Assembly (NCBI RefSeq): GCF_000315625.1
Contig: NW_005434607.1
Coordinates: 55,040-119,039, forward strand
From: Guillardia theta CCMP2712
Lineage: Eukaryota; Protista; Cryptophyta
Reading direction: 5' to 3'
Length of the DNA stretch: 64,000 bases
Below are positions 1-64,000 of the stretch, one piece after another. Made by a program: the position numbers and the translations under genes. The notes under the pieces were generated by a model. That model did no database searches, was not told the DNA's origin, and worked only from the letters and a program-made list of their open reading frames with translations. Position 1 is the stretch's first letter. Every line of letters starts with the position of its first letter.

Positions 1-1
1 A

Positions 2-3000
2 TCCAGATGTCGGCCAGATCTTTTCGACCCGTACCCGTTGGTGATACACAAACCACGCCCCCTCTGTCTCCCTCGACCCTTCCCCGTACACTGACACTTG
101 CCCTGCCTCGCCGCGAGGAGACAGGCAGCTCACTTCCCACTCCGAAGTCACATTACACCTGGCCTGACGATCACCAAAGTTGATGTTCACCACCTCCTTT
201 GCATACCCATACCCCTCCACCCTGATCCAATCTCCTCCGTCCACGCCCCCGACTGAAGGCTCTATCCTCATCACCACAAACCCCGAAGTCCATTCGTACC
301 CAAACCCATGGGTGTCCCAGTCAACTCCATTCCTGCTGATCCCAACAGTCATGTTCCCCTGCCACGCTGACCTTGCACGCCCAGGCACCAACACTACCAC
401 CATGGTGGACGAGACATACTCGCTTACTTCTGCCCGCTGAGACCCGAGAGTGATCCCACACTCCCTGTCCAGATTCCTCCCGAGGATGGTGATCTTCTCC
501 TCTTGCCCCACCCTTGCTGCCGACGGCTTGATCTCATCGATCCGGGGTGGCTCGTAGTAAATGTAGCTTTGCTCTCCAACTATGTAATCAACGTCTCGTA
601 TCACAAGGCGAAGGCTCGTCCTCCCTCCTCCCTCAGACGACGCTGGCGCAACACACTCACAGACAGTACTCGATCGTACCTCTGCCCACACTCGCACTCT
701 TGCAAACGCACACAGCAACATCTCAGCCTCGAAGTCTTCTCCCTCGAGGAGCAAACGTGTCCCTCCCTGGCTGGGGCCTGACGTTGGATGTATGCTGGAC
801 ACAGAGGGTAAGCCCACGTATCGTACTACACACGCTGGGTTGATTTCCATGCTGTGTGCCGAGGGTCTCAGGCGATAGACTCCCTTGAGCTTGGGGGGGG
901 TCACGCATGTGGCCTGGTCCGAGTCTTGGACTTGACAAGACATCGCATGGTCGCCTACCAGCAACTCAAAGGTGACCCTGTGCATGAAGTGCCCCGACAG
1001 CGTGACCTCAGTGCCTCCAGTCTCGTAAACAGCCGATGGCCTGATAGCTTGTACCGATGCTTCGCCAAGGTAGGTGAAGTTGAAGCTGCTCTCGCAGTAC
1101 TTCACTCCTTGCATAGATAGCGATATCACCACCGAGCCTGCTGGATGCGGCGGCAGCTCGCAGGTCACGAGGCTTGACGAGAGCCACAAGCTCGTCGACT
1201 TTGCCGCCCCGAACCAGCACTCACGATCTTGTTCCTTCACAAACCCCTTTCCTGTCAGAATGACGCTTTCGTTCCTCCCGCTTGAGGAGCCCACGTCTGG
1301 CAACGCTGAAACTAGAGAGCACGCCTCCATGATCCGCACTTGACCGCTCGGATGCTCTGTGCACTCAGTATCTTCCATGCCTATGCCAATCGTCAGATCC
1401 TCCGGGACGGCTGTGGCAGGAATTGTGCACTCAATCTTGCTGTCAGACACAACCGACGAAGGCAAGACGGTCGTGCCCATACAGCAGAGAAACCCGTCTT
1501 GAAAGCCTGATCCCACAACCTCCAGCCTTGTAGGAACGGAGGTCACCCCTAGCGATGGCACTACATCTGTGATCTCAGGGGCTGCTATCACTTCCAGCAC
1601 GAGCTCTGATGTCATCGCGCCGCCATCTTGAGAGACATACAGCAGCTTTTCCCCTGGCGTCTGACTCGGCGACAGGCAAGCAAGCTTAGTCGAGGTCAGC
1701 CAGACTGCCAGTTGCGGATGCGCTTCATCATGTCGGAAGTCGCACCAGTATTCTGACTTATAGTCGAAGCCACGGCCAAACACCGTGATGCTGCCCGTCT
1801 GATGCGAGAAGAGCCTGCGAGGCTTCAAGTGCGAGACCGCGAAGCCTCGCAGAAACAAGAAGCTTGTCCCCGTGCTAAACCAGCTCCCTAACACCTGGAG
1901 ACTCAGAGTCGCGTTCCCGGCGTCGTGCCGTGGCGTCGTACAGCTAATCATGTTGGCAGCTATCCATCGCCCCCTGCTCGGCTCCGAGCCTTCTCCGAAC
2001 CTGCAACCCACCCCCGCGTCCGCTTCGAAGCCTCTCCCTATCAGCGTCACCGGGGTCTCCCCGCTCTCGGGTCCGCATGAGGGCTCGATCCGGTGCACCT
2101 CAGGCGCCTCGTAGAAGGATAACACCTTCTCGTCCTGCGTGAAGTCGACTCCGTTGAGCGACACCTCAACGTATACCTTCGGCTCCTCACGCGTTGCTGA
2201 GGCGATGCAATGCAGCAACGTCGAGGACGCAGTCCTTGCGGCGGTGACTTGAGTCCCCACTCGACACCACATGGAGTCCTCTCTGAAGTCTGTCCCGTAT
2301 ACTTGAATCTGCGTCTTTTGTTGGAGTTTGCAGAAGGAAGGTGTCAAATTCGTGATAGTGGGGGGTCTCACAAAAAGAAATTCTGCATTCCCAGAATGAA
2401 TTTCGTTTTCCATGCCAAGTATTTTGTCGATAGACATAGTTTGCTCTGTCGTTGTCATTGGTGTCAAACACTGTATTTGAGAGCTTGAAGGTCTTGATAT
2501 AAAATGGAATGGACGACAAGTAATTTTCTTTTTGATTATTGGATCGTAAGAAATAAGTATTTTGGTTCCTCCAGATATTGGACCAATAGTAGGATAAAAT
2601 CGAATCGAGCTGGTTATAATCTGGATGGCTGCGGTCAAAACACATCTTTCATCAGGATGTGAAATTCTAAACGAAAAATTACCCGCACGTTGCAAATAAA
2701 TGGTGCACTTCGCTGTAGTTGAGGAAATGATTTGAATGCCGGACCTTCGATTCTGAAACGAGCATAATGAATTGTTCAACATCTCCAAATTGCTGCCCCT
2801 CACAGTGATATCATGTTGGAGATCTTTGCTCCAGGAAATCACTGAAGGCATCACTTCCATGGACGGGAAAGAAGCAAATTTCAACAGGTGTCTATCACTC
2901 GTGCAGTCCTTCTCATTCAACCCGTACTCCACTGCTTGTACTGACGGGGAGACATAAGGAATGTGGCATACAAGCTTGGATGAGGTTACAAATCTTGTGG

Positions 3001-6000
3001 GTACAAATTTCTGTCCAACTTTGCACTTCCCCTGACTTTCAAAAGACGAACCAAAAATTGTTATCAAAGATGTATCATTGGTACAAACTTCGGAAGGAAA
3101 CAATGAAATTACTCGAGCAGCAAATTGAAGGAATTCAAATTTCAGTGTTTCCAACATGACCCGAGGATAGGAAGACGATTCATATACTTCCACCGTAACG
3201 AAACCTGCTGAGTGCTTTGGAGTAACACAGACAAACAACAATCGTGACTTTTTCTCACAGGACGATGCTGTGCGATCAAAGAGAACTTGCAAATTGTGTT
3301 GTTCAACATTCAAGACAACTGACACATAGTCTCCTCCTGCAGCTGATCCAGAACTTGGAACCAATTCGATATTACCACTTGAAATTGACAAAATACTGAA
3401 TTGTTGCGATGACCATTCAGTTTCAAATGCATCAGATACGAAGGATGGAGCACTGAAATATACTTGGAAGCTATGATTTCCTTCACGTAAAGAAAGCGAC
3501 ACACAAGTAAGTTTCGTGCTAGACGCCATGACAGTCATCATCATATGCTTTTCAGCTACGATGCATCTGTGTGATGACACATCAAAACTCTCTCCTATCA
3601 CTGTGACAATCGATGGTCGAAACGATCGAAGAACTTTCGGTGATATTTCCCAGACTCGTGGGGGTTTACGTACGATGATCTTGAGAGAATTCATGCTTGA
3701 TAGATGATCCATTCTTGCAGACACTTCAAATATTCCTTCAATCTCATTCGGAACTTGGCAGGTGATTGAATCAAAAGGAGCCGGGCTTGCCTCATATTGT
3801 TGAGATCGAACAATGCAAGAAATATTTTTGAATTTTGAAACAGATATGGAAAGCTTCAATAGCAAAAGAGTTGGTCGAAAAAGGAATCCAAAGGAAGGCT
3901 GGATAGACAAAATTCTGAAATCCTCACTCAAAAATTCAAAGTTCAACTTCGTTTGATACAGCTCGTTTTGGCCGTCAGTCACACGAAAGGAGTGATTACC
4001 CACAGTTCCTTCAGGAACGGTGCATTGAATGGAAGTAAAATTGATGTAGGCCGCTTTTGATCTGAATGATCCGAAAAGACATCTGTAGGTGGATTCCACC
4101 TGAAAATTATTGCCTAGGACCGTGACATAGGAACCACCCTGTTCGCTTCCATAAGAAGGAAAGATCGAGAGAACATAAGTATTCTGAAAAATCAGAACAT
4201 GTTCCATGAGGATTGACGGAAATTCCCTCCAAAACAGGTTGATTTTATTCTCCCCTACATTCAAAGAGACAAAAGTGCAACGAAGCATTGAAGAACTGAG
4301 AATAGAAGCCTCGTGATCCGCAATTTCACCCATTCGACATTTCAAGGTAAGGAACGGGGATGAAAGTCCAACACCAATCATGGTTATTGTGCTCACTTTG
4401 GTGTTTGTACGATTTGGAATGATTTGATCTATTCTCGGTCTTTGCACGAATGGAAACATGCCGCCGTTAGCAATATACTCTGATGAAGACGATTTGAGGC
4501 TGAACTTCACCTGCGAGGGAGCATCTAGAATCGGTGTATGACAAATGGCAAGTGATCGATTCACGACTGATGCACGTACGTTTTGGGATCCAAAGTAACA
4601 AGTTGTGGTCATATGCATGGAAAAGTTTTGTCCATGTACATATACACTGGTACTCTCATACAGAAATCCGACTGAAGGCTGGCATGTCACCAGTTCGACA
4701 GAGGGTACTTTCTGTGACATATTAGCTGTGACAAGGTTGAGTTTTGCTGAAGTTAATTCAAAGTCTATATTGTTGAAGCTCACATACATAGAAACATTGG
4801 AAATCAGTGGGACTGGCTCCAACGCGTACTGCACCTCGAAAGAGTTGTTTTGATTCTTCTGTGTGAGACGTTTCGATTGAACCTTTGCAAATTTCACCCG
4901 TACATCTGCATTCCAGTTAATGCTGCCAGTCACAGTCACAATACTTGCAGCATTTGCCAGGATCTGTGTAGGATTCACAAGAATATCTTGCGACGGCAGC
5001 CAGTGATGAAATATTTTTTCATCAGACATCAATTCATGAGCAACAAAGCTTATTCGAAACTCAGAAACAGCAACATTTGACTTTGGGGAAAGGCATTGCA
5101 AAGCAGTTGAAGACATGAATGTTCCAGCTGTAAAAATGGTGTGGGTCCCATTTCGAAACCTGAAAGTAAATGCACATTTCCAGTCATCTTGCACAAAATG
5201 GATGCCATAGATTTGAACTTTCGTGTTTCCTGTGCTCGGAGCATTATTCGGGAATATATCGAACAGTAAAGGCGTCGGAATCACATTCAAATGAGTTCTT
5301 GACAGTATACTGTCTCCCAAAAGCAACTCAAACTGCATTCTCTTAGGAGCCCCCCCTGGGAAAATACAGGAAACTGAAGTCGAATTCATCCACACAGTTC
5401 GCACACGATGACCATCAAAGTTGCAGGAGACATATGGAGAGAATTGAAAATCTACTTGGCCAGAGCATACAGCATACAATCTTGAGCCACCACAGCTATA
5501 TGCATATTCTGGAACAAGATTCCATTCATGTTGATCGGAGGTGTATAAGAATACAACTACTGATGTCTTGAGAGGTTGACTGTCTTGAACTAGAGTGAAT
5601 TGAACATAACCCAAGGCGTTCTTAGGTACCCAAGTGATAGCATGTGTCTTATTCACTCTATGAAGGTCTGCAATCGTCTCGCCAAATCTACACTTGACAG
5701 CAAAAGCATCTGGAAAGTATCCTAAGACAGTTATGGGATAACCACCCCGATGGCTCCCTGAAGTCGGGAATATACCTGCAAGAGAGAATCTGCTGTAATA
5801 TTCAAACCAAACGCCTCCATGCGATTGGGAAAATTTCGAAACAACGGAAACTTGCACCATGCCTTTAGCATGGGGCGGGGACAAACACGAACAAGACGTT
5901 GACGTCAAAAATCTGAAAGCAGCTCCCGCCTCATCGCCAAACCTGCAGAAAGATGACGAGACAATGAAGGTTCCTGTGATTGTCAGAACTGTTCCTCCAT

Positions 6001-9000
6001 CCAAAGGACCAGACGATGGAAAGGCACCAGAGATAAAAGTATCTTCAAATATTTCAATTTGCTTCGAATTTGTCATCACATTCGATGAGCGATCGAATGC
6101 AAATTGCAGCGAGACATTTGAAATACCAACTTGCCTTGCGAGAGGTACAAAGCATCGAGCAACACTTGAAGAAACCAACGCAAGATGAGTAAACTGCTGT
6201 CCAAACAAGCACTTCCATTGCTTGTAGGCGGGAGGAAAGATTCCTCTCAAGCTTATCAATTGACTGCCAAGCCTTGAAACTCTAGACGGAAACACTTCTA
6301 ATAGAGCTGGAGATTGAACAAACAAGAATTTGAAATCTAAATAAACAACGTGCGAATGCAGTAAAATCAAACTAAGAGTCGCGTTCCCGGCGTCGTGCCG
6401 TGGCGTCGTACAGCTAATCATGTTGGCAGCTATCCATCGCCCCCTGCTCGGCTCCGAGCCTTCTCCGAACCTGCAACCCACCCCCGCGTCCGCTTCGAAG
6501 CCTCTCCCTATCAGCGTCACCGGGGTCTCCCCGCTCTCGGGTCCGCATGAGGGCTCGATCCGGTGCACCTCAAGCGCCTCGTAGAAGGATAACACCTTCT
6601 CGTCCTGCGTGAAGTCGACTCCGTTGAGCGACACCTCAACGTATACCCTCGGCTCCTCACGCGTTGCTGAGGCGATGCAATGCAGCAACGTCGAGGACGC
6701 AGTCCTTGCGGCGGTGACTTGAGTCCCCACTCGACACCACATGGAGTCCTCTCTGAAGTTGACTCCTTCTACCTCCACAATCGTGTTGTCTACTCGTGGC
6801 ACTTGCAAAGGATGGATACCAGAAATGCTCGGAGGCATCGCAAACTCAAAGATCAGGTCAAGGCTGTCCCTTTCCTCCCGCTCTTGTCCTATTCCAAACT
6901 TGACGGCTCCTGGATATTCGACTGCTCGTGTTATGCAATAAGCCTTGTCGCTCTCAACTACTTCTGCTTCGACCGCTAGCTGCCCAAACCAGCATAAAGC
7001 ACCTCTCTGTGGCAAGTCGCTTGCCGACACCTCAACCCGAGTACCACCTCCCAATGGACCAATGGTAGGAGTGATCAAGATTGCCCTCGATCTTGGAACA
7101 GCCTCAAACACGACATCTCCAACACACTCATCAAGCCCAAACATCGAGACGCTCAGCGTTGTCGGACCTTCATGGCGTTGGGGAATCGAGCACTTCACCA
7201 GACTGGATGACAGCCACTGTCCGGGTTGAGATTGAGATGACGAGGCGTTCAAACGGCAGACAAGGTCCTCCACCGACAAGAAATGAGACCCGATCACTGT
7301 AATGGATGAGTGAAGTACCCCATTCACATATCCAGAAACCGTCGGGGCTGCTTCGTATGAAATGAGTATCTTGTTTGAGAAGCCATCTACTGCAGGTGTG
7401 TATATTGATAGCTCATACTTCCCCTGGGGCTGTGGAGAAAGATTGCATGTCACCATCGATCTGGAGTCTCCCATGACTGCAGTGCTGTCTCCGCCGACCT
7501 CGCAGAGGCTTAGTCCAGGCAAGAAATTCTGACCGTATATCGTCACCACTCCTCCTTTGTTGGATAAAGCTCGCCGAGGTATCACGTTGGATATTTCTGG
7601 GACTCCAGCGTCAACAAAAGAGAACGAGCTCGTTACAAGTGATCGCTTGTTTCCTATCAGCAGCTCGAGATGGACCTCCCCTGCATCATGCGGGGGAGCT
7701 GTGCACCTGACCTGAGTGGACGAGATGAGCGACGACTTGACTCTGAGCTGATCAAACACGCATTCGATTGAAGCATGCGGAGGGAATACCCCGCTGACGT
7801 AGACCGCTGTGCCGCCACTCACGTCTGCCATGGACGGCTGTGCGGTCATCACAGATTCACGAGAGTGAAACATGATCGTGTATGGCATGCTCTTGTGACT
7901 CGAATCCTCTGACTCCAAGGTCAACGACATGTTGCCCACGGCCTTTGTTGGTCGCTCACACACAACTGCCGAGGCCGAAAGCGGCGTCAACCTTGATCGT
8001 AGATGCTGATACCCAAACCGGCAGTACTGTAGCAAAGAACCGCTGAACCCCTCGCCAATCAACGTGATGAGATCTGTGGCACTATCGCTTTGTGTCGGCT
8101 GGACGTTCTTGATGTGTGGGACCTGCTTCAGCAGATACTGCACACTCTCTCCCTGCACCTTGTCATCCATGCTTCTGATTGTCACTTGGACACCGTCAGC
8201 TTGTAATGCCGGGACGACGCAGGTCAAAGATGTAGACGTCAAGACTTGAGCTGGTTCGCTCGAAGGTGTCTGATCGAACCAGCACGCAAGCCCGGCTTCC
8301 GCGAGGAAGTGAGAGCCCAATATCGTCACCATGGACTTCAATGCAGTGGGCCCTTCAGAAGGAAGCACAGCAGACACCTTCATAGGCTCATACACCAAGA
8401 ATCCCAGGCCTTGGCTGTGGTGGTTACCGATGTGTACCGAAATGCTCACCAGACCTTGCAAGACTGGTGGAAGGTAGCATTGCACAACGTCAGACTGAGT
8501 GAATGATCCAGGCGTCATGATGCCATTCATCTCACAGGCAGCACTCCCACCGAACGACCACCCTTGGTCGTCGAGAAGGACGTTTATCTCAACTCCACCT
8601 GCGGAAGGTCCTACGGAGGGGAAAATATTTTTTATCAAATGCATGTTTTCGTTCAGGAAGAATGGCCTGGAGAATATTTTTCCATCATTTGAAAGTGTTA
8701 CAGAGCTGTTTCTTGCAAGGATGTTTGTATGGGTCGAAATTGATAACAATATTGGAGATTTTTGATGTATCTCATCCTTGCCGAAGATGTGGGATCCAAC
8801 TTTGCATTTCGAAAGATTTGTTATTAGAAAATTGGATCCCGAAATTTCTAAGAGAACTTTTCCTGGGGTACTGATGTAGTCGACTGCTACTTGATCTATG
8901 CTGGGGATTGGTTCCATGAATGTCACATTCTCTCCGCTGCAGACAGAATCATTGCTGAATATTTCAAAATGGTTTATCTCAATTAACGATGGACTTCCAC

Positions 9001-33000: not shown

Positions 33001-36000
33001 CAATGCGTGTTCCACCCGAGATAGGACCGCATGTTGGGTTCAACTGAATCTGATATGAAACATTTACATATTCAAACCATAGAGCATTCAGCGAAATCAC
33101 CCTTTGACCTGAAAGAATCTTCACCAATAGATTGCCCGATGAATATTGCGGAGCCAGACACTGCAGAGAATTGTTTGACAAAATTTTTGACTGAGTGAGA
33201 AGTCTCCCAAACAAGCAGCTGATATTTAGATATGATGCAAGATTTGTATCAACGTGAAGGGTTACATAAAAGTTGCCTGTTGTTGGACCAGAAGTGGGGA
33301 TTACTTGAATGATTGTCAGGTTGCTGTGGACAAGAAAATCTTTACGATTACTCGACAAATTCCACCCATCCCAGCGCAATGAAAGATTTGATTGCCCAGG
33401 AATGAGACGTGGAAGGGTGCAGACGTGTTTCTGTTGCAAAATGTTGACTGGAGAACTATCCGAGCCCGAGCCAAAAACACATCGGCAAGTCCCATTCAAC
33501 ATACGGCCTGATACCTGAAGCTCTAACAAGATACCTCCAGAGGATGGGCCAACAGAGGGAACCACAGCGACAAGCTGTGGAACAGTCACAAATTTGTATA
33601 CGTTATCACACAAAGGTACTGATTGGTTTTCAGATTTCAAAACAAAGGGAACTATACCTTCCTTGTGATATGGTGAGATGCATGTGACATGGTTCACTGA
33701 AAGAGACGTGGGGAACACGACGAGTTCGCCGAAATGGCAGGAAGGTGAAATCCAGCTCAAAGTCATGTTGAACGTGACAGTTACAAGGGCTCCTCCGTCC
33801 CCTGGCCCTGCAGTACTGTCCAAATGACATTTAAATGGATGCACAATATGCAACGTCTTATTCAACAAAAACGGTCCAGAATTCTTCAGAAGCAGCGTTA
33901 TGGTGTGATTTCCTGGCTTTTCATGCGCAGGCAATTTACAGACGAATTCCTTCGTATTGAGCTGTTTTAGAGCATTTGCTTGTAAATTTCCGATCAAAAC
34001 TTTCTGGAGTGTGTCAATGGTGAAGATTTCACTTACAAGATGCAACTCTGCATTTGAATTAAGCAAAATATTCTCTGGATACACAACAACTTCAGCAACT
34101 CTGTGTGAAACCTGAACAGATGAATTGAAAACTGAGATGGAAGTAAAGTTGTGAGAAATGAAAACTTGTATTTTCAGAAGGCTGTCATACCCCAACCCTG
34201 CATAATGGTGCATTTTTAGCTCACACCTCAACACGGTTGAGGTCAAAATCTTGATGATTGAGCTCTTGTCCTGGACTCGGCAATATAGAGCTGATGAAAA
34301 TGATGATCCAAAGATTGTGACGGCGTTGTGACTGTTCAAAAACAGTCCTGTCGGATGTACAGAAAGAAATTGGAATGGACTGATAGACTTGAATTCCACG
34401 CTATTTGACGAGACATTTTGTGCCAAGTCTTTGACTGTCAAACGAATTATGCCTTCGATCATACTGGGTGTCACACAGGACAAAGATGTAGAGGATTGCC
34501 AGGACACTTCTACTTGTTTTTGGTCGAATTGGCACCTCAAATCACCATGTTTATTGAATTCACCACCAACAATTGCGATGACCATCCCTCCATGTGAAGG
34601 GCTTTGACTTGGGTTAACATCTATGAAGATAGACGGAATCCTGGGTGACAAGGCTCCACATTCGAAGTAGTACAAATTGTTGACTGACAAGACCACCATA
34701 CAAGTGTTGTTCTGAAAGGCAATTGAAAACGGACAAGAAACAAACTGCTGGGACAAGAATATCGCATTAACAGGTATAGTAGAGTATCTGCCATGACAGT
34801 TACATATGTAGTTCATTCGTTCATCAAAGCTCTGTCCAACAATCGTCAAGCGAGGGCTTATCGAAGGGTTGTAAAGGAGGGAATGGACCTTCAATGAAGG
34901 AGGATCGAATAGGATTTCTTCAGATATGCGTGCACCCGTCGTGTCCAATAGAAACACTTTAGTTGGTTGCGTGGTAATGAAATACCCGACCGTGCATTGA
35001 ACCTTGGTGGATGACACAGACAGCACAACAAAACTTTGATTGGAAAAAAAACAACGCAAATCTTCCCCAAACTGATTTCCTATGAATTGAATCTTCCATG
35101 AAGTCGATGAAACGTAAAAGTATTGCATTGAAATATCTCTATGAACAAACAAGAAAAACCTGCAGGAAGAAAATCCTTGGTGAGTGCAACAAAGCTTGTA
35201 CGTACCGTCATTGTTCGAGGGGAGTAAAAATGAAATCAAAGAATCGTTGTGGAGAACAAAATCATTGATGATTGAAGAAGCAATGAATAACTGATCAACA
35301 AGCAGCAAACCATTCCCTAGCACCGTGATCGAGTCCCCACCATTCACAGATCCCGCGCTGGGTTGTATCGATACTATCGTCACCCCGCTTACATATTGAT
35401 AGTTACAAACTGTCCTCGTGTAGTCTGCCCCGTTCACGGACAATGACAACGACACATTCCCCGCAACGTGGACTGGGCTTGTACAAACTGCCTGTGTGCT
35501 TGATTGAAATGTACCTTCTACCGTGCGTTCGCCAAACTTGCAGATCGGCTGGTAGCCTCTTTCAAAACCTCGTCCTACTACAGTCACCGTCGTTCCTCCA
35601 TCTGACGTCCCTGAGCTGGGATAAGCATGCAACACTTGAGCTTCAGCGATGTACTCAAACCAAGTGGAGCTGCCGTTCCTCGATGGGACATCTGACACAA
35701 TGAAGACATTGACAAGGCCTGGACTCTTTGATGGCGGGGTATTGCACAAAAGAGTAGTTGTCGTCTGTGCAGAACATGTCGTTTCATGCTTTCCAAATAC
35801 CCAGATGTAAGTATTCCTGTACGAGTGTCCCAAGTTCTCTCCTATCAAGGTTATCAAAGTATCTCCCGTGACTGGGCCTGTCGATGGTACCACCTCATAA
35901 AGTCTGGGAGGGTGTACCCTCGCAAAAGGCAGCTGGTTGCTGTGCTCAGTCGGCTGATTTCCCTGCATATTCCCCACGGAGACATAGTGCATACCGATAG

Positions 36001-39000
36001 GGAATGATCGTATCTGGGTTGCCGCCATACTGCTCGAGAGGATTGTAGCCTCATACTTGGCATCGGAGACTTGAATGTACAGATGATCCAAATCTCGAAA
36101 ATTCAGACCAAAAACTGTCAAGGCTGTTCCTGCTCTATGACAGATGGATGGCACGACACGGAAAATCGTAACCTCTCGCGTCAGAAACTCAAACGTGAGC
36201 GGTTCATTTACCAGCGATAAGCCCCTCCATGTGACATCAAGTCCCACCACCCCGTGCAGGCTAGGTGCGGCTATGTCACATACGATTTCCTTATCTGATA
36301 TCTGTCGGGCAGGATATGTGAAGGTGTGCGAAATGCGACAGAACAAAGTGTCAAACCCTGAAAACCCCCAGCCATGTACCGTCACAGTATTTTTGGAACT
36401 TGCATGCCCATGACTAGGAGACACTCTTGTCACCTGATCTCTGCCTCCAAACTCGGCTAGAAACCCATTCAACGCTGCAGACAGAGCCCCGTAGTAAATT
36501 GATATCAAGTATTTCCCTTCAAGTCGGTCGATGATGGGACATCTTAAAACCCTTGACGTCAGATACTGCGCCGAAGTACGTATGTCGGATCCAAACAAGC
36601 AGGTGTATTGATTGATTCCAACGAAACCCTCACCACTCACAAAGATCGATTTGCCTTTGCTCTTCTTGATCAGAGAAGGAACAATGCCTTCCAACCTGTG
36701 CGGCGGCATCAAAAGATATTGCACACAATCTGTTGACTTCCTGGTATCGTTCGAAAGCCTTTTGGTGTGCACGCAAATATGAACAAGTCCATCACCGTCT
36801 TGGATTTCTGGAATCGTGCACATTATGGTTGTAGAATTCATCACCATCGCTTGAGCAACACCATCTCGAACTTTGCAAAAATACTCTGTCTCTTCGTGGA
36901 AAGAGTTACCCCAGATGGTGACCGCGGTCGATCCCATTCGAGGTCCAACACTTGGGGTAACTCGCTCCAGAACAACCCGACTCACGATCTCGATCGATGC
37001 GTTGGCGGATTTCAGGTCATAGCCTGAGTCTGGGCAAAGAGCAATTACGTGCGATCCTATGCCTATCTCTTGTGTTGTCAGTTCGCACAGAAGCATGCTT
37101 GAAGACGGAGCTTCCACAACATACTGCAGGCTGGCAATCTGCAGGCACATAGGAGGGTTTGCAGAAAACCCTTCTCCAATTATCGTCAATATGCTTGTAT
37201 CCCCTGATTCAAAGACTTTGGGGATGAGAGCACTTATTTCGATCGATTGCCTCAAGACAATCGGGATCTTGTTCGATCGCAAGTCGGCATTTGCTTTCCG
37301 AGCTACCTCTATGAATGCTGTTTCTGAAGATAAAATCCGCGGCATAGCCACCTTACAGAGCAGTTGTCCATTCAACAAAGCGCCCGGCATCGACGATGAC
37401 GGCTCATGTGAGAAAATACAGAAATCGCCCTCCAACAAATCTACCCCTACCACTGTAACTGATGAAATTCCGGATGTGGTCAGCGACGACGGGTTTACGC
37501 TATATATGCGAGGGACGGACAAGTATTGAAATGAAATCTGCTGACCAGAAGTGTAACGCTGACCCGAGGACCAGAGGCTAAGCTCAGCAAGAAAGCTCCT
37601 CTCGAAGAAGGGAGAAACACATATGATCATGAACGAGCTCTTGAACGATGTGTCTGAAGATGAGCTTGAATCGAATTTGCATGAAAGTCCTGAAAAAAAA
37701 CCCGTACCTTGCACCGTGATCGAGTCCCCACCATTCACAGATCCCGCGCTGGGTTGTATCGATACTATCGTCACCCCGCTTACATATTGATAGTTACAAA
37801 CTGTCCTCGTGTAGTCTGCCCCGTTCACGGACAATGACAACGACACATTCCCCGCAACGTGGACTGGGCTTGTACAAACTGCCTGTGTGCTTGATTGAAA
37901 TGTACCTTCTACCGTGCGTTCGCCAAACTTGCAGATCGGCTGGTAGCCTCTTTCAAAACCTCGTCCTACTACAGTCACCGTCGTTCCTCCATCTGACGTC
38001 CCTGAGCTGGGATAAGCATGCAACACTTGAGCTTCAGCGATGTACTCAAACCAAGTGGAGCTGCCGTTCCTCGATGGGACATCTGACACAATGAAGACAT
38101 TGACAAGGCCTGGACTCTTTGATGGCGGGGTATTGCACAGAGTGAAACTAGTTGTGAGATAAAAACACTGAGCTTGAGCTTGTCCAAAGCGAATCTGTGT
38201 AACAGCTGAAAAACCAGATCCAAAAATTTGAACCTGTGTTCCTCCACCGTATTGCCCAAACGAAGGGGAGAGACCGGAAATTCGAACAAGGGAATTTGGG
38301 TTTCTTTGATGCTGGTCCACGACTGCAACGGAGAAGTCATTGGACCATTCAAGCCTGTTGGCACTGACCGACACATTCACTGCTTCACTCGAGGTCGGGG
38401 TGATGGTGCAGACAATCAGCGACGAGGATACTATCCGCGAGTCTACTACCTTTCTCCGGTCTTGCCTGCAAAGCATAGACTCCATCTCGAAATCTGCCCC
38501 TTGCACTGTTATGGGTGTCGAAAGCCCCCTCCGCACGCTCGATGGGAATACACCGTGTATCCTTGCCACCGGCCTGTACAAGTACGTGACCCCAGCATCT
38601 GAATAGAGCCCATCGTCGCCAAGCACGACAACCTCTACATCAGAGCTGACAAGCTGCTTTGGGCTCACGCACAACACCATTGTGCTCGACACCTGGGCCA
38701 AGGAATCTGTTCTGAGCCTCCCGAATCGACATGCTGATTGTCCTCCTACGAGATTCTTTCCTCGCACGGTCACAATGGTCCCACCACCAAGACTTCCCTG
38801 ACTTGGTACGCATGAATGAATTCGAGCGCCCCCTTGCTCTTCAAATATTTCAGGCTGTGCCACTATCTTGAATATATTGTCCCCCTCCGTCACCTCTATG
38901 GACAGGTTGAACACTTTCCTGCAACGCAAGGAATCGAAGTGGCAGAGCATCACATCCTCAGACACGAAGACTGCTTGGACATAAAGACTGTCAAGTTCAC

Positions 39001-42000
39001 ATCTGACAACCTTATCGTATGAGAACCCCGAGCCAACCAAACGAATGAATGATCTTTCAAGACCTCTGGCTCGTTGTCGGCATTGAGCCTTCACCACCTT
39101 CACAGGTTTTGTGACTATGACTTGGACTGATTCCGCGCTCAGGCCGTTGTCACTGCGTACGTACATAGAAAAATTTCCATGCTGTAATCCTTCAATTGCG
39201 CATTCGAGGTGTGTACTGGTATGAAAATATGGAATACCTTCTTTCCTGCCAAACATGCATCTCAAGCTCTCCCGATCCATGAAGTTTTCTCCAGATAAAG
39301 TCACTCTGGCCGTCGCCTGCCCTTCGACCACAAACAATGAAGGCCAAACTGTGCTCAGGATGGGATTTGGCATGTACGAATAAAGCAAGTCCCACTCAAC
39401 CATGCCCTTCACCACACTTATCACCCTCAGCTGCATCAGACCAGGCCTACCTGGTGGCGAAACACAGACAAGCCTTGATGTATTGGCGTCACTATACCCT
39501 TCCACAGTTGTCGCGCCGAATACGCACCGGACCGATCCAACAGTTTCCATACCATGACTTGTGCTGAAATGGATGACCGTCCCCCCCGAACAAGGTCCTT
39601 CCGATGGATGATAATCAAGCATGTGGACTGCATCGGTTGGTATGTAGAGGAAGGGAAAGCGTGGCGATTTGAAAGAATTTCTTCCTGTGCTGGTTATCAT
39701 CATCTCAACTGATCCAGCCTCGTGCGCGGGCGGCGCTGTGCATTGCAAAGTCTTATGGTCGACTATCTGAGCATCCACAGGGCTTTTTCCGAACAAGCAT
39801 CTCCAAGTCGTCGTTGGAAAAGCTGTACTTGCTAAGACGCTTATGACCGTGCCCCCTCCAACAGCTGAAGACGTTGGGTCAATAACGATGTCCAACGGAA
39901 ATGCCCAAGAGTGCAGAGTTCTCACGTTTGAGAGATGTCCTCCAACTTTGCTGCATCGAATCGAATGTTCCCCGGCAGGCAACCCCGGGATCTCCAATAC
40001 AGCACGAGATACATCCACCAACTCCATTGCAACAGCACTGATAGCCCCTACATCGCATAGCACCTTCTCGTCGAAGTTTGCCCCAAGCATTGTTATGCGC
40101 GAAGGCGTCTCAGCCAAACAGACCTCTGGAATGATCGCATCGAGCTGTACTTGGGTATAGAACTCGTACAACAAATAACCCCTGCTAAACACCTGGCTGT
40201 CAAGGCCCACAGACATAGAAATGGTTCCTGCTGGAGATTCTGGAGTCCGACACACTATTTTCCTCGAATCCACCACCGTGCTCAAAGTTGCAGACGTAGA
40301 GAAAAGACAATACAGGTCCTTTCCAGACAGAAAATTTCTTCCTACAATCGTTGCTATGCTGTTCCCCTGGGTCGGGCCAGATGACGGAAAGATCTCCTCG
40401 ACTACAAACAATGGAGCAAACATGAATTCAATGCCAGGTCCTGATAATGCCAAGCTGCCCTTGTACAGCTCTAAACGGACGGTACCTTCCTGATGTGATG
40501 GCGTGTAACACACTACTTCTTCTCTGCTCTTCCCTAACTTAGCATCCACCATCTCACCCTCAAATGAGCAAACAAGCGCATCTTTCACATGCAACTTGCT
40601 GATAGCAAACGTGACAAGGCTTCCACCATCGGTCGGACCTATTGTCGGGTAGACCAGCTTGACTATTCCCAACTCCTCATACTGGAACATGAAGTCCATA
40701 ACCTTCTCCTTTGCATCAGACATGACTAGGACGGATACATTCCCTGGGGAGGATCCTGTGGGGACGACACAGACAAATTTTCCTGGCAAGCTCTGTCCCT
40801 GTGCTACCTGATCTCTGAACTTAAAGCTGACATTTCGTGCAAGAATCAGACGTGAGTGAAAAACGGTCAGCGTTATCCCACCCACCATTGGCCCTTTCGA
40901 AGGAGTGATCAACAAAGCTTCAATCTGGGGTTCGAGTCGCACGGTCTGACTTGATAGACTGAAGTCCACTCCGTTGTTCGCGACTTTCAAGCTCATCTTC
41001 CCCTCCTCCAAGCTCGGTATATCACAGAGAACTTGCGTCGATGTTATCAAAGTAGCCATCTTGACATGCTTGTCGGCGAACAGACAAGAAATGTCGTGGC
41101 TCTGCTCAAAGTTTCGCCCGATCACAGTGAGATGAAGGTCAGGTGACAAGAACACTTCTCCAGGTAAGACAGCATCGACTTGCTCATCATCGTAGAATTT
41201 GAACGTCCATTCTTTTCCAGAGTGCCTTGATGCTGCAGTATCGTACTTGACTGATTCCCGCGATGCAAGCCTCATAGCCACTTCTCCTATCACTGTTGAA
41301 GGTGGCGCGACACACCGAAATTCATCATGTCTACTCCCTTTGATCAATCCAGTCCACTGTGCTCCTATCATACAGCCAAGATCCTTCTCGCTCAATGCAC
41401 CCCTAATACGTATGGATATGGTTGTTCCGCCCCGTGCAGGCCCGCAAGTCGGTCTGATCTCAAGTATGTTTGTGCTGGGCTCTACTGCGAGCTGAAGGTC
41501 ACTCGACAAAGGCTCAAGCCCGTGGATGTTGAACGTGATCCTGTAAAGTCCAACAGCCAGACCTTGAGGTACACGACAGACATAATCGCCCGAGCTCTCC
41601 CGTGAAAGCTTTGCCACAGCTCCCCCAATCCCACAGCCCGCTTCAAGAAGCGGAGCGAGGCCTTGTCCTTTCATTGTTATGACCGTAGAAATTTCTTGGT
41701 AAGCAATACTAGGCACGATCGACGTCACCTGTGGTTCGGGCCAGTAGAGGTATGCAAACTCGTTAGAGTTCAGCGCAGCAAAAGTGTACTCAGACTGGAC
41801 TATCGTCAATGGAACCAGTCCAGCTTGCATGGAAGGGCTCTCACATACAGCAAGACTGGCTGCTATTGTGATGGTCGCCCTTCCGACCGAAGATTGACCA
41901 AATTTACAGAAAGTAGTATTCCTTCCAAGCTGATTTCCGATCAAAGTAATCTTGGTTCCACCACGAGTTGGACCGGATGATGGAGTAATTTTCAGCACTG

Positions 42001-44197
42001 CAAAAGCTTCTTCGAAGTCAAAGCGCAAAACATTCGAGCATACTTGATCTTGTTCAGATATGCACAGCTTCAGCTCGACACGCCTTGCAAAAGAGCTCGA
42101 GATCTTGCACGCTGCCATCGACGATGAGATCATCACTGCACTGCTGTGCATAGAACCAAATCTGCACGTCGAATGCAGACCCATATGGTCAAGAGATCCA
42201 ACGACAGAGACAAACGTGTATACACCGACCAAACCTCGGCTTGGTAGTAGTCTCTGGATCTTTATCTGATCTAAGGAGATGAATAGAAGAGAGTTTGATA
42301 TAATATCATTACTCCCTACAGACAACGACACTGTTACATTCCCTGAAGCAAGTGCCGGGATACCGCATTGCACCCGGGAGGTAGATAGCCAGCGAGCTTC
42401 TGCATATGTCTTGCCCTGCCCGAAAACGCAGCGGGCATCGTTCATGTCAGTCCTGAAAACTCCTCGCAACTCGATCCAAGCTCCATCGCCCCCCCGACCC
42501 ACGGTGGGGCTCAAAGAGAGCAAGAGCACTTCCGACCAGTCGTCGTCCAGAATCCTCGCATCGATCAATTGATTGTCGCAGTAGAAGGTGAAAGACTGTG
42601 CCCTCGGGATGTCTCCGCGCGCTTTGCACAGAGACACGGTCGACGTCAGCCATACAGCCTGCAGCAACCTGTTGTCCTGTCCAATGCTGCATGATACCGC
42701 ATCCGGCATGAAGTTCTCTCCAACAACACGAATTACGTGCAATCCCGTCTCACTCTCAACATGCTGGGCCGTTGATTGGACGGTACATTGCAAGGTATAC
42801 TGTACGTTCATAGATCCGCTGACCACCAGACCATCCTCACCACATGTTACATGTACCTGCACAATGGATGGAATGTCGTGTGCTGGTGTGACGCAGATTA
42901 CTCTCGTAGACGACAGTACCCTCGCCTGGCTCATTCCGATGTCTTCGAAGACACACGTCACCAGCATGACGTCGGCTTGATCCCCAAGATGTTCACCAAC
43001 AACGGTTAGCTGCATTCCCCCCTTGACTGGTCCTGACGAGGGGATCAGCTTGTTGATCCGAGGTTCTCCCAATATCTGAAAAGGTGAGCTACACTTCATC
43101 CCAGACTCTCTTTTGTTGTTGCTCACCCGCAGGGTCACAAGCTGAGGCTCTAGGCTCAATACCAGACGGCAAGTTCCCATGGCTGTCGACAAGATGTCAC
43201 ATACCTGCCAGCCCAGCCCGTTGATCTGTACATAGAGCGACATCTCAAAGTGTCTTCCCCGTAATGTCACAACAGCGCTGGAATTACCCTGGACGGCCCA
43301 CGATGGTTGTATAGAGTCTATCTCGGGTGTTTGGAGCACATAGAACGCTCTGAGAGCTGAGACATGCTGCCCATCTGTCCCTTTCACTTGCCAAAATACA
43401 GGACCAGGAGTGCTCGGTAGCGTCTTGCAGCGAATCAATGAGGAAGACGCCCACAAGATCAAAGACTCTCGGGCCCCATATCGGCACCCAGGACGTTGGA
43501 TATCAAAGTGCTTGCCGACGATATCTACCCACAACCCGCCTTGAATAGAGCCAACGGACGGAAGTACCGCCTCTAGCATTGCCCTTTCTCGTTCCAAGTA
43601 TTGAAAGAATACATTGCTTTTCGATCGAGTAGTACCTAACCACAAAAATACCCGTACTCGAGCACTACTTGCTTTGGCTGCGGAGAAACATCCAAACTGT
43701 TGATCGCTTATCCGAATAGCTCCTGTCCTTGCTCCAAGCTCACCGAATTCACACTCCATAGGCATGTCAGGTATCGTCTCTGCAGTGGAAAAGCTCACGA
43801 AGGTGCCTCCGGCTGCTGGTCCGACACTGGGCGTTGCTGTTTGTGGTGTGGGCTCGGCAATGATATTCAAACTCAACCCGGGAACAGGTCGATATTGCCC
43901 GCCTCCAACACTTAAGAACAAGGTAAAGTTGCCTATCCTTCTTATCCCTTGAAACAGACAAAGCACCTTTGTGGAAGACTGGTAGCGAGTATCGCCCAGG
44001 AGATCACCGCCCACCATGCACGACATCTGGGGATTGGGTCGAAAGTTTGTTCCGACGACTGTCAAGAGAATTTGGCCAAGAATGGAAGAAGAAGGCTCAA
44101 ATCTTACAAATATTGCTCCGGTACAATGGCTAGAGTGAGGTTGGTGTTCGTTGTCAACGTTGGAGTCCACTTGACAAATAAAAAGTTTGTCGTCATT
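2..44197 (-). CDS. Giant tandem IPT/TIG (Ig-like) repeat protein, distal part; open frame of 14,732 codons running off the left edge (3'-partial)
   Basis: Hand translation with codons starting at positions 1 mod 3 gives IPT repeats at every site sampled: 44101 FEPSSSILGQILLTVVGTNF, 33058 SYQIQLNPTCGPISGGTRI, 19798 MVEPSIGPVKGGTIVKVSG, 10198 GYEWTSGFVVMRIEPSVGGVDGGDWIRVEG, 6058 IEIFEDTFISGAFPSSGPLDGGTVLTITG, window end RVRVEKIWPTSG. No minus-strand ORF in the track ends in this frame between 1 and 44197, as expected if there is no in-frame stop. The upstream bound is TGA at 44198-44200. Confidence 0.9.
3..2289 (+). repeat. Block A copy 1 (direct repeat of 9900-12186, offset 9897)
   Basis: Near-identical sequence with about five substitutions seen (281, 1133, 1202, 2178, 2252). 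It may extend beyond the left window edge. Confidence 0.95.
6375..8620 (+). repeat. Block B copy 1 (direct repeat of 11802-14047, offset 5427)
   Basis: Near-identical sequence with roughly ten substitutions seen. Shadow ORFs in the track are duplicated (e.g. 6680/12107, 8246/13673). Confidence 0.95.
9900..14047 (+). repeat. Full GC-rich cassette containing block A (9900-12186) and block B (11802-14047), which overlap by 385 bp
   Basis: Direct comparison with 3-2289 and 6375-8620. The 385-bp overlap is present three times (1905-2289, 6375-6759, 11802-12186). Confidence 0.95.
18649..18901 (+). repeat. Block C copy 1 (253 bp; repeat at 24673-24925, offset 6024)
   Basis: Identical except one substitution seen (cagactctct vs cagaccctct). 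Confidence 0.93.
24673..24925 (+). repeat. Block C copy 2
   Basis: Matches 18649-18901. Confidence 0.93.
35320..35748 (+). repeat. Block D copy 1 (429 bp; repeat at 37711-38139, offset 2391)
   Basis: No differences seen. Identical shadow ORFs at 35443-35703 and 37834-38094. Confidence 0.93.
37711..38139 (+). repeat. Block D copy 2
   Basis: Matches 35320-35748. Confidence 0.93.
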
Positions 44198-58523: not shown

Positions 58524-58643
58524 ATCAACTATCAACCTTCCTTGCACTGCATGTCAACACGAATTCACGACAGCATGAACGAAACGAACATGCGATCTGA
58601 AACGGACGTCAAAATCTTTGAAAAGCAAGCATGATTCTCCATG

Positions 58644-63300: not shown

Positions 63301-63380
63301 CAACTAACCAGACGCACCACTATGGTTTTGAAAACAGCTGCTTCCTTTTGAGGCAACAACTGTGTGTTCGAAGACGACAT
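60375..63380 (-). CDS. NAA15: N-alpha-acetyltransferase 15/16, NatA auxiliary subunit (Nat1/NARG1 family, TPR repeats)
   Basis: Family-typical motifs: [119 protein letters not shown]-terminal FPLATVF. Introns at 63267-63317, 63143-63190, 62962-63006, 61048-61099, 60924-60983, 60742-60796, 60631-60679, 60523-60570, 60427-60472. Stop TAG at 60375-60377. The model needs one extra base near 61120-61127. Confidence 0.93.
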
Positions 63381-63699: not shown

Positions 63700-64000
63700 G
63701 GCACGTGGTCTTTTTTCAGACCGTTACATTGCGAAACGACTTCACTGAGCCTGACTGTGTGAGCCGCCGCGTCTGCGGCACTCCGAGCCGGGCCGGGCCT
63801 GCAACCGGGGCGGCGGGGCCGGGCTGCCAGCTGCGGCCCGGGCTGTCGGAATCCCGGCCGGATTATGCGCCCAGTGAGACGCCGTGCCCAGGCTATGACT
63901 GCGCGACTTGAATAACGGTCGCAACACCGTAACTCCCGGCACAATGATATCCCGGTTTGCCAAGTCCGACTCTTTACCGCCGGTGACCCACTGTACGGTA
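63700..64000. promoter_or_regulatory. GC-rich upstream/intergenic region of NAA15
   Basis: Rich in CCGG/GGCC/CCCGGG words like the 58640-59170 spacer. It lies upstream of the NAA15 ATG and a putative spliced 5' leader. Confidence 0.35.

What the first reader, a model, noticed from the sequence alone, without database searches (positions are those of the whole stretch)
2..44197. A 44-kb open reading frame invisible to the ORF track; candidate mega-exon
None of the listed minus-strand ORFs below 44197 has a low coordinate of 2 mod 3, and spot translations in that frame all give in-register IPT domains. The frame therefore appears stop-free for 14,732 codons. Neighbouring genes have many 45-71 nt introns, yet this stretch needs none. 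If the 44120 break is an error, the exon is at least 57.8 kb. Staying open through AT-rich, highly diverged sequence implies purifying selection on the frame. Automated gene callers would probably fragment or miss it.
Basis: seen in the sequence. Interest (0 to 1): 0.85.

Follow-up and report, generated by a model that had tools for sequence, protein, structure and literature searches.

The report
Giant unannotated TIG-repeat gene, Guillardia
The 44-kb stop-free frame is real and is part of one roughly 64-kb gene of the alga Guillardia theta that would encode a secreted protein of about 21,000 residues made of some 240 Ig-like (IPT/TIG) domains, nearly all on one enormous exon that the public annotation cuts into a few wrong small genes or misses.

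Summary
Confirmed. The minus-strand frame 2-44197 has 0 stops in 14,732 codons, while the other five frames carry 528-830. It stays open for 1,750 more codons past the window edge, so the run is 16,482 codons (49.4 kb).

The window is Guillardia theta CCMP2712 scaffold JH993031.1. The gene has an ATG at 58523, a signal peptide, two short introns (51 and 53 nt), then one long TIG-coding stretch. It ends with about 280 residues that have no known domain and no membrane segment.

The frame break at 44.1 kb is a reference consensus error where two paralogous copies of a GC-rich cassette fork. Three independent DNA data sets carry one extra base there, which restores the frame. Whether the join codon is TCG (Ser, favoured) or TAG could not be read.

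If the frame is continuous, the exon is about 63 kb and the product is 21,223 aa (2.3 MDa).

Purifying selection is shown by synonymous excess against an environmental relative and between internal duplicates. Sister-genus (Hanusia phi) protein records are collinear over about 14 kb without indels.

GenBank holds only four fragmentary models here, three of them in the GC-rich blocks. No G. theta RNA support was found, so the single-exon reading rests on sequence and comparison. The scan had already noted this gene in other notes.

The parts
58172..58523 (-). Exon 1. The start codon is at 58523-58521, followed by a signal-peptide-like N-terminus (MPYCNFSLLLSLLGLCVVES) and the first TIG domain.
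   Evidence: Sequence read. This is the first in-frame ATG after a stop. PF01833 E 1.5e-09. The signal peptide is judged by eye, not by a predictor.
58121..58171 (-). Intron 1: 51 nt, GT..AG, phase 1, at a TIG domain boundary.
   Evidence: Read unspliced, the frame runs into TGA. Spliced, it continues as a regular TIG domain.
57863..58120 (-). Exon 2: one TIG domain. GenBank's 77-aa model (window 57867-58097) lies inside it.
57810..57862 (-). Intron 2: 53 nt, GT..AG, phase 1, at a TIG domain boundary.
   Evidence: Splicing joins exon 2 to the frame of 44107-57876.
44116..57809 (-). Upstream part of the giant exon: about 53 TIG domains, AT-rich.
   Evidence: Collinear with Hanusia phi protein P0271 over window 46612-55881 at 57% identity, with gaps of at most 3 residues.
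44103..44116 (-). Faulty consensus of the reference at the join of the two frames. One base is missing and 3-4 letters are taken from a paralogous copy.
   Evidence: Runs X1 and X2 show +C behind 44110, and X5 shows +G behind 44111; all three show T>G at 44113 and 44114. The X1 contig graph forks at 44102/44103 into two branches of depth 61.5 and 56.8.
1..44110 (-). The flagged stop-free frame: about 169 TIG domains. It continues 5,249 nt beyond window position 1 to a stop at L002 17663-17665.
   Evidence: Collinear with Hanusia phi P0160 over window 1931-6421 at 56% identity, with only 1-residue gaps.
38700..44102 (-). GC-rich cassette present at about 2.5 times the depth of the sequence upstream of the join. 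It is shared with at least one other locus.
   Evidence: X1 depth is 153.7 here against 61.5 upstream, and X2 depth is about 6 against about 3.5. The second branch leads to sequence absent from the window. The nucleus is haploid (PMC4007541).
9900..14047 (-). A 4.1-kb GC-rich block whose two halves recur in frame. Positions 9900-12186 match 3-2289 (99.8%), and 11798-14047 match 6371-8620 (99.5%).
35307..38139 (-). In-frame 442-nt duplicate pair: 35307-35748 matches 37698-38139 (99.1%).
45092..51981 (-). In-frame 800-nt duplicate pair: 45092-45891 matches 51182-51981 (99.4%).
35265..44026 (-). GenBank model GUITHDRAFT_113438 (XP_005827389.1, 2,904 aa). It starts at an internal Met, then has a 50-nt 'intron' and a 9-aa last exon.
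5731..13945 (-). GenBank model of 2,254 aa (P0152) with 453-nt and 997-nt 'introns' that cut out TIG coding sequence.
1..2413 (-). Start of the GenBank model of 2,442 aa (P0151). It runs off the window to L002 17402 and has a 73-nt predicted intron near its end.

Best explanation
The stop-free run belongs to one nuclear gene of the cryptophyte Guillardia theta CCMP2712, at scaffold JH993031.1, complement 49,788-113,562 (63.8 kb).

The gene starts with a signal peptide. The first two IPT/TIG domains sit on small exons separated by 51- and 53-nt phase-1 introns. Everything else is one exon of about 63 kb. Even if the join at 44.1 kb were not continuous, the exon would still be 49.4 kb.

The conceptual product has 21,223 residues (2.32 MDa). 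It consists of about 240 tandem, mutually diverged TIG domains (median pairwise identity 22%), then a C-terminal stretch of about 280 residues with no known domain and no membrane segment.

Shown: the open frame, the domain content, the reference error at the join, purifying selection, and collinear protein records from the sister genus.

Inferred: the protein enters the secretory pathway and forms a long, disulfide-bonded, glycosylated beads-on-a-string rod, in a cell-surface coat, fibre or adhesive role. It is made at very low level or only in a state not sampled by the public RNA runs.

The GC-rich blocks inside the gene are recently copied or homogenised cassettes shared with paralogous loci. 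GC-biased gene conversion is a plausible cause of their composition.
For: Open frame: 0 stops against 528-830 in the other frames, and it extends to 16,482 codons.

TIG content and an unbroken period of about 87 residues.

Organism and scaffold: the neighbouring protein is 100% identical to GUITHDRAFT_158303, and the DNA is identical to GCA_000315625.1.

5' exons and introns.

Join: three DNA data sets add one base, and contigs of all three span the join.

Selection: plus an in-frame 3-nt deletion in the relative.

Hanusia phi proteins P0271, P0160 and P0191 are 56-64% identical and collinear. The next-best in-gene matches reach at most 46% (22-30% apart from one block). So individual domains keep their identity across genera.

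No membrane segment or other Pfam domain in the tail.

608 Cys and 246 N-x-S/T sequons.
Against: No transcript evidence in G. theta. The one deep RNA run gave 6 reads on 6 kb, in both orientations. About ten smaller RNA-type runs hold none of the sampled words of two stretches.

The join codon may be TAG. The table read literally gives CCC TAG TTT, and the one unlisted T>G that would make it TCG could not be located.

The cassette at the join is multi-copy, so the assembly could have linked two paralogous giants.

Neighbouring-gene introns of 42, 45 and 48 nt are all multiples of 3, and two are stop-free in frame. A few hidden introns therefore cannot be excluded outside the roughly 14 kb checked against Hanusia.

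The function is pure inference. The C-terminal fold prediction failed (pLDDT 33).
Confidence: 0.65

Rival explanations
1. Assembly chimera. Two paralogous giant TIG genes were joined through the shared, near-identical GC-rich cassette (38.3-44.1 kb). The 5' part (44.1-58.5 kb) and some or all of the 44-kb frame would then belong to different loci. Each would still be a very large TIG exon.
For: The X1 contig graph forks at 44102/44103 into two upstream continuations of similar depth. The cassette has about 2.5 times that depth. The reference mixes letters of both branches. The second branch is not in the window. The nucleus is haploid, so the branches are loci, not alleles.
Against: Contigs of X1, X2 and the environmental relative X5 all cross from the upstream-specific sequence into the cassette, so that adjacency is real. 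The scaffold has no N across the gene. What is untested is only the exit from the cassette on its downstream side.
Confidence: 0.15
2. The gene is broken or silenced in strain CCMP2712. A TAG at the join ends translation after about 4,770 residues, and the 49-kb frame downstream is an untranslated, not yet decayed remnant.
For: The literal reading for X1 and X2 is CCC TAG TTT. RNA is virtually absent.
Against: Runs X1 and X2 each have a third T>G that the table does not list. It must lie between 44104 and 44112, where only 44104, 44105 and 44111 are T. At 44111 it gives TCG (Ser), one synonymous step from the relative's TCA; TAG needs two adjacent changes.

Differences between internal duplicates within this genome are biased to third positions.

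16,482 codons without a stop in sequence of 40-45% GC leaves no room for more than very recent loss.
Confidence: 0.1
3. This is not one exon. A few short introns whose length is a multiple of 3 and which lack stops are hidden in the frame, so the largest true exon is smaller.
For: Four of the five introns seen in the window are multiples of 3 (42, 45, 48 and 51 nt), and two are stop-free in frame. About 20 TIG periods are 92-116 residues long and could hold 14-16 extra residues.
Against: No profile insertion of 10 or more residues was found in any domain. No convincing GT..AG of the right length sits at the long periods. Over 9.3 + 4.5 + 1 kb, the Hanusia proteins align with gaps of at most 3 residues. 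Any intron not a multiple of 3 would have broken the frame, and none does over 63 kb.
Confidence: 0.15
4. The GenBank picture is right: several separate TIG genes of 77 to 2,904 residues with non-coding DNA between them.
For: These models exist in GCA_000315625.1.
Against: The sequence between the models is open in the same frame and encodes regular TIG domains. The three long models start at internal Met codons. Their 'introns' (453 and 997 nt) remove in-frame TIG sequence, and their last exons of 9-18 residues serve only to reach a stop. Hanusia P0160 spans the unannotated gap between two of the models (window 2414-5730) without a break, and P0271 lies wholly in sequence that carries no model where inspected (50,759-57,866).
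Confidence: 0.03

Closest known systems
Giant IPT/TIG-array proteins of stramenopiles and oomycetes (for example Heterosigma akashiwo 7,233 aa, Phytophthora fragariae PF005_g5786 7,171 aa, Albugo laibachii 7,926 aa), all uncharacterised
   Same: Long uninterrupted arrays of PF01833 domains in protists, with 21-25% identity at domain level.
   Different: All hits in the 5,500-17,500 aa range are at most 7,926 aa, a third of this product. Many carry extra domains (PF05587, PF07699, PF14545) that are not found here. No orthology is apparent.
IPT domains of plexin-A and MET ectodomains (PDB 5l5k, 7m0r, 7mo7)
   Same: These are the best solved-structure matches, at E 1.7e-13. They are extracellular Ig-like stalk domains.
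   Different: Those receptors have 3-6 IPT domains, a sema/PSI head, a membrane helix and a cytoplasmic domain. None of these is present here.
Fibrocystin (PKHD1) and PKHD1L1, large TIG-rich surface or ciliary coat proteins (from my own knowledge)
   Same: Signal peptide plus many TIG domains, and an extracellular rod or coat role.
   Different: Those have about 12-14 TIG domains plus G8, PbH1 and PA14 parts and a membrane anchor. Here there are about 240 TIG domains, no other Pfam domain and no hydrophobic segment.
Titin and other tandem Ig-domain giants (from my own knowledge)
   Same: Hundreds of diverged Ig-like domains. Adjacent domains are the least alike. Position-specific conservation between species.
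   Different: Titin is cytoplasmic, uses I-set and FnIII domains, and has over 300 exons. This product is secreted, uses one domain type and is essentially on one exon.
PKZILLA genes of Prymnesium parvum (bioRxiv 10.1101/2024.01.29.577497)
   Same: Giant protist genes that automatic annotation split into fragments. They are expressed at TPM 0.5-2 and were seen only with rRNA-depleted RNA-seq.
   Different: They are polyketide synthases of 137 kb with 17 exons. This gene is a structural repeat protein with 3 or 4 exons.

Membership tests
IPT/TIG domain family (Pfam PF01833) | Match to the profile above the gathering score (20.9 bits) | tested here: met
   Scores of 905.7, 567.8, 962.8, 730 and 314 bits for the five pieces, with 11-26 separately significant stretches each.
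IPT/TIG domain family (Pfam PF01833) | Ig-like beta-sandwich fold | not tested
   No TIG segment was folded. The only model made was of the C-terminal tail, and it failed. Sequence similarity to solved plexin and MET IPT domains is significant.
Plexin/MET-type receptors | Sema and PSI domains, a membrane helix and a cytoplasmic signalling domain | tested here: not met
   Only TIG-type families are found over all 21,223 residues. There is no 19-residue window above 1.55 on the Kyte-Doolittle scale in the last 1,750 residues.
Fibrocystin/PKHD1-like proteins | TIG array combined with G8, PbH1 or PA14 domains and a C-terminal membrane anchor | tested here: not met
   None of these Pfam families was hit, and no hydrophobic C-terminal segment was found.
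Giant stramenopile TIG proteins | Orthology or shared accessory domains (Anth_Ig PF05587, Ephrin_rec_like PF07699) | tested here: not met
   Identity is 21-25% only. PF05587 appears only at E 0.22 in exon 1.
Single-exon (intronless over the repeat array) gene structure | mRNA collinear with genomic DNA | tested here: inconclusive
   No usable G. theta RNA. The indirect test, collinearity with Hanusia phi proteins, covers about 14.8 of 63 kb and shows no indel above 3 residues. That these Hanusia records derive from a transcriptome is my recollection and was not checked here.

The most novel reading that the evidence does not exclude
G. theta carries a functional coding exon of about 63 kb. That would match or exceed the longest continuous eukaryotic coding exons I know of. 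It encodes a 2.3-MDa secreted chain of about 240 TIG domains, among the handful of largest proteins predicted in any eukaryote. Each domain is individually conserved between genera. Embedded GC-rich cassettes are kept 99% alike within the genome by ongoing gene conversion with paralogous giant genes, and a repeat layout is shared with Hanusia phi.
Probability: 0.45. Interest if true: 0.7.

Novelty: new member of a known kind. Interest (0 to 1): 0.6.

Why it matters
G. theta is the reference cryptophyte genome. A gene taking 64 kb and coding for a protein of 2.3 MDa is absent as such from its annotation and from protein databases, and the scan's other notes suggest it is one of several.

It shows that composition-trained gene callers drop the ordinary-GC two thirds of such genes and invent introns in the rest. 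Proteome-based comparisons of cryptophytes therefore miss their largest surface proteins.

If the exon is confirmed, it sets an upper mark for exon size in an intron-rich genome. It also gives a natural system for asking how hundreds of like domains are kept from misfolding and from recombining.

The function, possibly in the cell coat or periplast, in adhesion, or in a life-cycle stage, is open and testable by proteomics of surface fractions.

Tried and rejected
(1) A 49-nt GTAAGA..CAG candidate intron at 44107-44059 as the cause of the break. Rejected: the length needed was 2 mod 3, and it would delete the start of a TIG domain. The read data then showed a missing base instead.

(2) Programmed -1 frameshifting at the join. 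There is no slippery heptamer, and the read data make it unnecessary.

(3) Search for the second branch's upstream sequence in the window: absent. The same search in the scan's index was blank.

(4) Homologue search with the 340 residues upstream of the join, meant to recover a contig-derived protein crossing the join: no hit.

(5) Two scans of metagenome contigs for relatives of the join and of the window's low end: nothing.

(6) Hidden-intron hunt by profile insertions, by long periods and by GT..AG pairs: nothing convincing, though not exhaustive.

(7) Pfam on the two degenerate stretches (window 28136-28981 and 44374-44928): no family. The local profile gives weak in-register TIG signals.

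(8) C-terminal 280 residues: no Pfam family, only weak Atlas leads (LEA-2/DUF3712-like, score 0.80), and the single-sequence fold failed.

(9) Literature: no paper links Guillardia with TIG domains.

(10) The bacterial promoter/terminator scan is irrelevant for a eukaryote.

(11) Read laying is capped at one call, so only 38700-44699 was laid.
Full report
OBSERVATION. The reverse complement of window 2-44197 translates into 14,732 codons without a stop. Over the same span the other five frames hold 528 to 830 stops. A second open run of 4,590 codons lies at 44107-57876 on the same strand, one frame off. Both are IPT/TIG arrays. PF01833 scores are 568 to 963 bits per 4,600-4,900-residue piece, and no non-TIG family passes its cut-off. 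A profile built from the gene itself finds 162 domains in the first run and 49 in the second. The distance between domain origins is 78-98 residues in nearly all cases. The exceptions are one period of 104 and one of 116 residues, and clean multiples (165-175, 257, 346) where degenerate domains are missed.

WHERE IT IS. The neighbouring gene (61-63.4 kb, NatA auxiliary subunit NAA15) is 100% identical to GUITHDRAFT_158303 of Guillardia theta CCMP2712. Locus L001 shows that the window is scaffold JH993031.1 of GCA_000315625.1, with window position w equal to record position w + 55,039. An N gap starts just beyond window position 64000, and beyond it lies a dynein heavy-chain gene.

FULL EXTENT. 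A search of protein representatives with the last 1,200 residues of the frame returned a G. theta model, P0151. Its first 804 residues equal the end of the frame, and it runs on past the window edge. Its locus L002 overlaps the window identically and has no N. In it the frame stays open for 1,750 more codons, to a stop at L002 17663-17665 (record 49,788-49,790). The stop-free run is therefore 16,482 codons, or 49.4 kb. The extra part holds 17 more TIG domains. It is followed by about 280 residues with no Pfam match and no hydrophobic segment. A single-sequence fold of this tail failed (pLDDT 33), and Atlas look-alikes are weak.

At the 5' end the first in-frame ATG is at 58523 and is followed by MPYCNFSLLLSLLGLCVVES, which I read as a signal peptide. 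Exon 1 (58523-58172) and exon 2 (58120-57863) each carry one TIG domain. They are followed by GT..AG introns of 51 and 53 nt, both phase 1 and both at domain boundaries. Exon 3 starts at 57809 in the frame of the 4,590-codon run.

THE BREAK AT 44.1 KB. I laid one RNA run and three DNA runs on 38700-44699. Contigs of two G. theta runs (X1 from 2021 and X2 from 2011) and of a freshwater metagenome (X5) that holds a relative about 2-3% diverged all differ from the reference in the same way. They carry one extra base (behind 44110 in X1 and X2, behind 44111 in X5) and T>G at 44113 and 44114. One extra base is exactly what puts the two frames in register.

In X1 a contig of depth 153.7 (38,3xx-44102) forks into two contigs of depth 61.5 and 56.8. 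One leads into the upstream frame and carries the variant letters. The other carries the reference's letters up to 44115 and then continues into sequence that is not in the window. G. theta's nucleus is haploid (PMC4007541), so these are two loci sharing a cassette of at least 5.4 kb, not alleles. The reference consensus mixed them and lost a base. Contigs of all three data sets cross the join, so the adjacency of the two frames is real.

The relative reads CCG GAG CCC TCA TTT GTA, which is open (P-E-P-S-F-V). For X1 and X2 the listed changes alone give CCC TAG TTT. Both runs, however, have one further T>G that the table does not list. From the contig ranges it must lie between 44104 and 44112, where the only T positions are 44104, 44105 and 44111. 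At 44111 it makes TCG (Ser), a single synonymous step from the relative's TCA, whereas TAG would need two adjacent changes. I rate TCG at about 0.9, but it is not read.

With a sense codon there, the exon runs from 57809 to the stop and is 63,059 nt long. It would be 62.7 kb if the 73-nt intron of model P0151 is real. The product is then 21,223 residues and 2.32 MDa, with 608 Cys and 246 N-x-S/T sequons.

IS IT ONE EXON? Any intron whose length is not a multiple of 3 would shift the frame, and none does over 63 kb. Hidden in-frame introns are the only way out, and they are not far-fetched here. The three short introns of the NAA15 gene are 42, 48 and 45 nt, and two are stop-free in frame.

Three results argue against them:
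- No domain shows a profile insertion of 10 or more residues.
- The few long periods have no convincing splice-site pair.
- Three Hanusia phi protein records are collinear with the frame. They come from EukProt EP00960, which to my knowledge is built from a transcriptome; this was not checked here. P0271 (3,103 aa) matches window 46612-55881 at 57% identity with gaps of at most 3 residues. P0160 (1,498 aa) matches window 1931-6421 at 56% with only 1-residue gaps. P0191 (339 aa) matches at 64% with no gap.

About 23% of the exon has thus been checked against the sister genus's records without finding room for an intron. If those records are transcript-derived, they also show that the orthologue is transcribed there. 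The rest is unchecked.

Direct evidence from G. theta is lacking. The deep RNA run gave 6 reads of 60 nt on 6 kb, in both orientations, from the 6% of the run that was read. About ten smaller RNA-type runs hold none of the sampled words of 41200-47199 or 2290-6370. The PKZILLA genes, at TPM 0.5-2 and visible only with rRNA-depleted libraries, show that this does not prove silence.

SELECTION. Of 36 listed differences between the reference and the environmental relative in 38.9-40.7 kb, 18 are synonymous, against 23.5% expected for random changes. Twenty-one fall on third codon positions. The only length difference in 6 kb, apart from the reference error, is a 3-nt deletion.

Of 28 differences between the near-identical internal duplicates, 16 are synonymous and 17 fall on third positions.

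Domains are old. Median pairwise identity is 22%, neighbours are the least alike, and there is no super-repeat. Yet each Hanusia segment matches its own position at 56-64%, against at most 46% elsewhere in the gene (22-30% apart from one block). Domains therefore keep individual identities across genera.

CASSETTES. Five in-frame duplicate pairs of 0.26-2.3 kb at 99-99.8% identity sit in the gene. The large ones coincide with GC-rich blocks, where GC3 is 0.5-0.69. Elsewhere in the gene GC3 is 0.35-0.46, and in the neighbouring NAA15 exon it is 0.45. The ordinary composition is therefore the AT-rich one.

Hanusia P0160 begins and ends with the same seven residues. These lie at the same point of the 389-nt element that in G. 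theta recurs at 6371-6759 and 1901-2289. The repeat layout therefore seems shared between genera, while the copies are 99% alike within G. theta. Concerted evolution with GC-biased gene conversion would explain both, but this is an idea, not a result.

ANNOTATION. GenBank has four models on the gene:
- 77 aa inside exon 2.
- GUITHDRAFT_113438 (2,904 aa, window 44026-35265).
- A model of 2,254 aa (window 13945-5731).
- A model of 2,442 aa (window 2413 to L002 17402).

The three long models start at internal Met codons and lie in GC-rich blocks. They reach a stop through a contrived last exon of 9-18 residues. One of them removes 453 and 997 nt of in-frame TIG sequence as 'introns'. No model covers window 13,946-23,945 or 50,759-57,866. 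The span 23,946-35,264 and 44,027-50,758 was not inspected. About 36% of the product is annotated, in pieces.

WHAT IT IS LIKE. The best solved matches are the IPT domains of plexin-A and MET. The largest TIG-array proteins found in a search restricted to 5,500-17,500 residues are 5,600-7,900 residues long. They come from stramenopiles, oomycetes and metagenomes, match at 21-25% identity and are all uncharacterised. The gene is a member of the IPT/TIG family by profile. It is not a plexin/MET-type or fibrocystin-type protein, because head, anchor and accessory domains are absent.

My reading of the mechanism is inferred from the signal peptide, the Cys and sequon content and the lack of an anchor. 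I take it to be a secreted, glycosylated, disulfide-stabilised rod, of the order of a micrometre if each domain spans about 4 nm (the domain length is from my own knowledge), serving in a surface coat, fibre or adhesion.

VERDICT. This is a new, extreme and unannotated member of a known kind. The scan had already noted the same gene (s1-430459, s1-430500, s1-430775) and similar giants on other scaffolds.

Noticed in passing
window 62958-63308: The three short introns of the NAA15 gene are 42, 48 and 45 nt, all multiples of 3. Two of them read through in frame without a stop. With the 51-nt intron of the giant gene, four of the five introns in the window are multiples of 3.
   Followed up: partly
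window 38700-44699 (runs X5, X7, X8): Freshwater, aquatic and lake metagenomes hold a relative about 2-3% diverged from this marine culture strain. X5 covers the whole 6-kb stretch.
   Followed up: partly
window 1901-2289, 6371-6759, 11798-12186; Hanusia phi P0160: The Hanusia protein starts and ends with MMSCVTP, at the same point of an element that recurs in G. theta 1,490 residues apart. The repeat layout seems shared between genera while the copies stay 99% alike within G. theta. This suggests concerted evolution, perhaps GC-biased gene conversion.
   Followed up: partly
window 43218 and 44049: All three DNA data sets disagree with the reference (C>T and G>T) inside the multi-copy cassette. 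These are either further consensus errors or letters of a third copy.
   Followed up: no
window 58530-58553: A short upstream ATG (ATGCAGTGCAAGGAAGGTTGA, six codons then a stop) precedes the start codon of the giant gene.
   Followed up: no
L002 18564-27402: Downstream of the gene lie a 117-aa model, a TsaD-family gene on the other strand and several models without Pfam hits. The gene ends about 0.9 kb before the next model.
   Followed up: no
L001 6518-9380: An N gap of 2,863 bases starts right after window position 64000, between the NAA15 gene and a dynein heavy-chain gene.
   Followed up: no
window 28136-28981 and 44374-44928: Two stretches of 282 and 185 residues have TIG-like spacing but no Pfam hit. 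The second lies just upstream of the join.
   Followed up: partly
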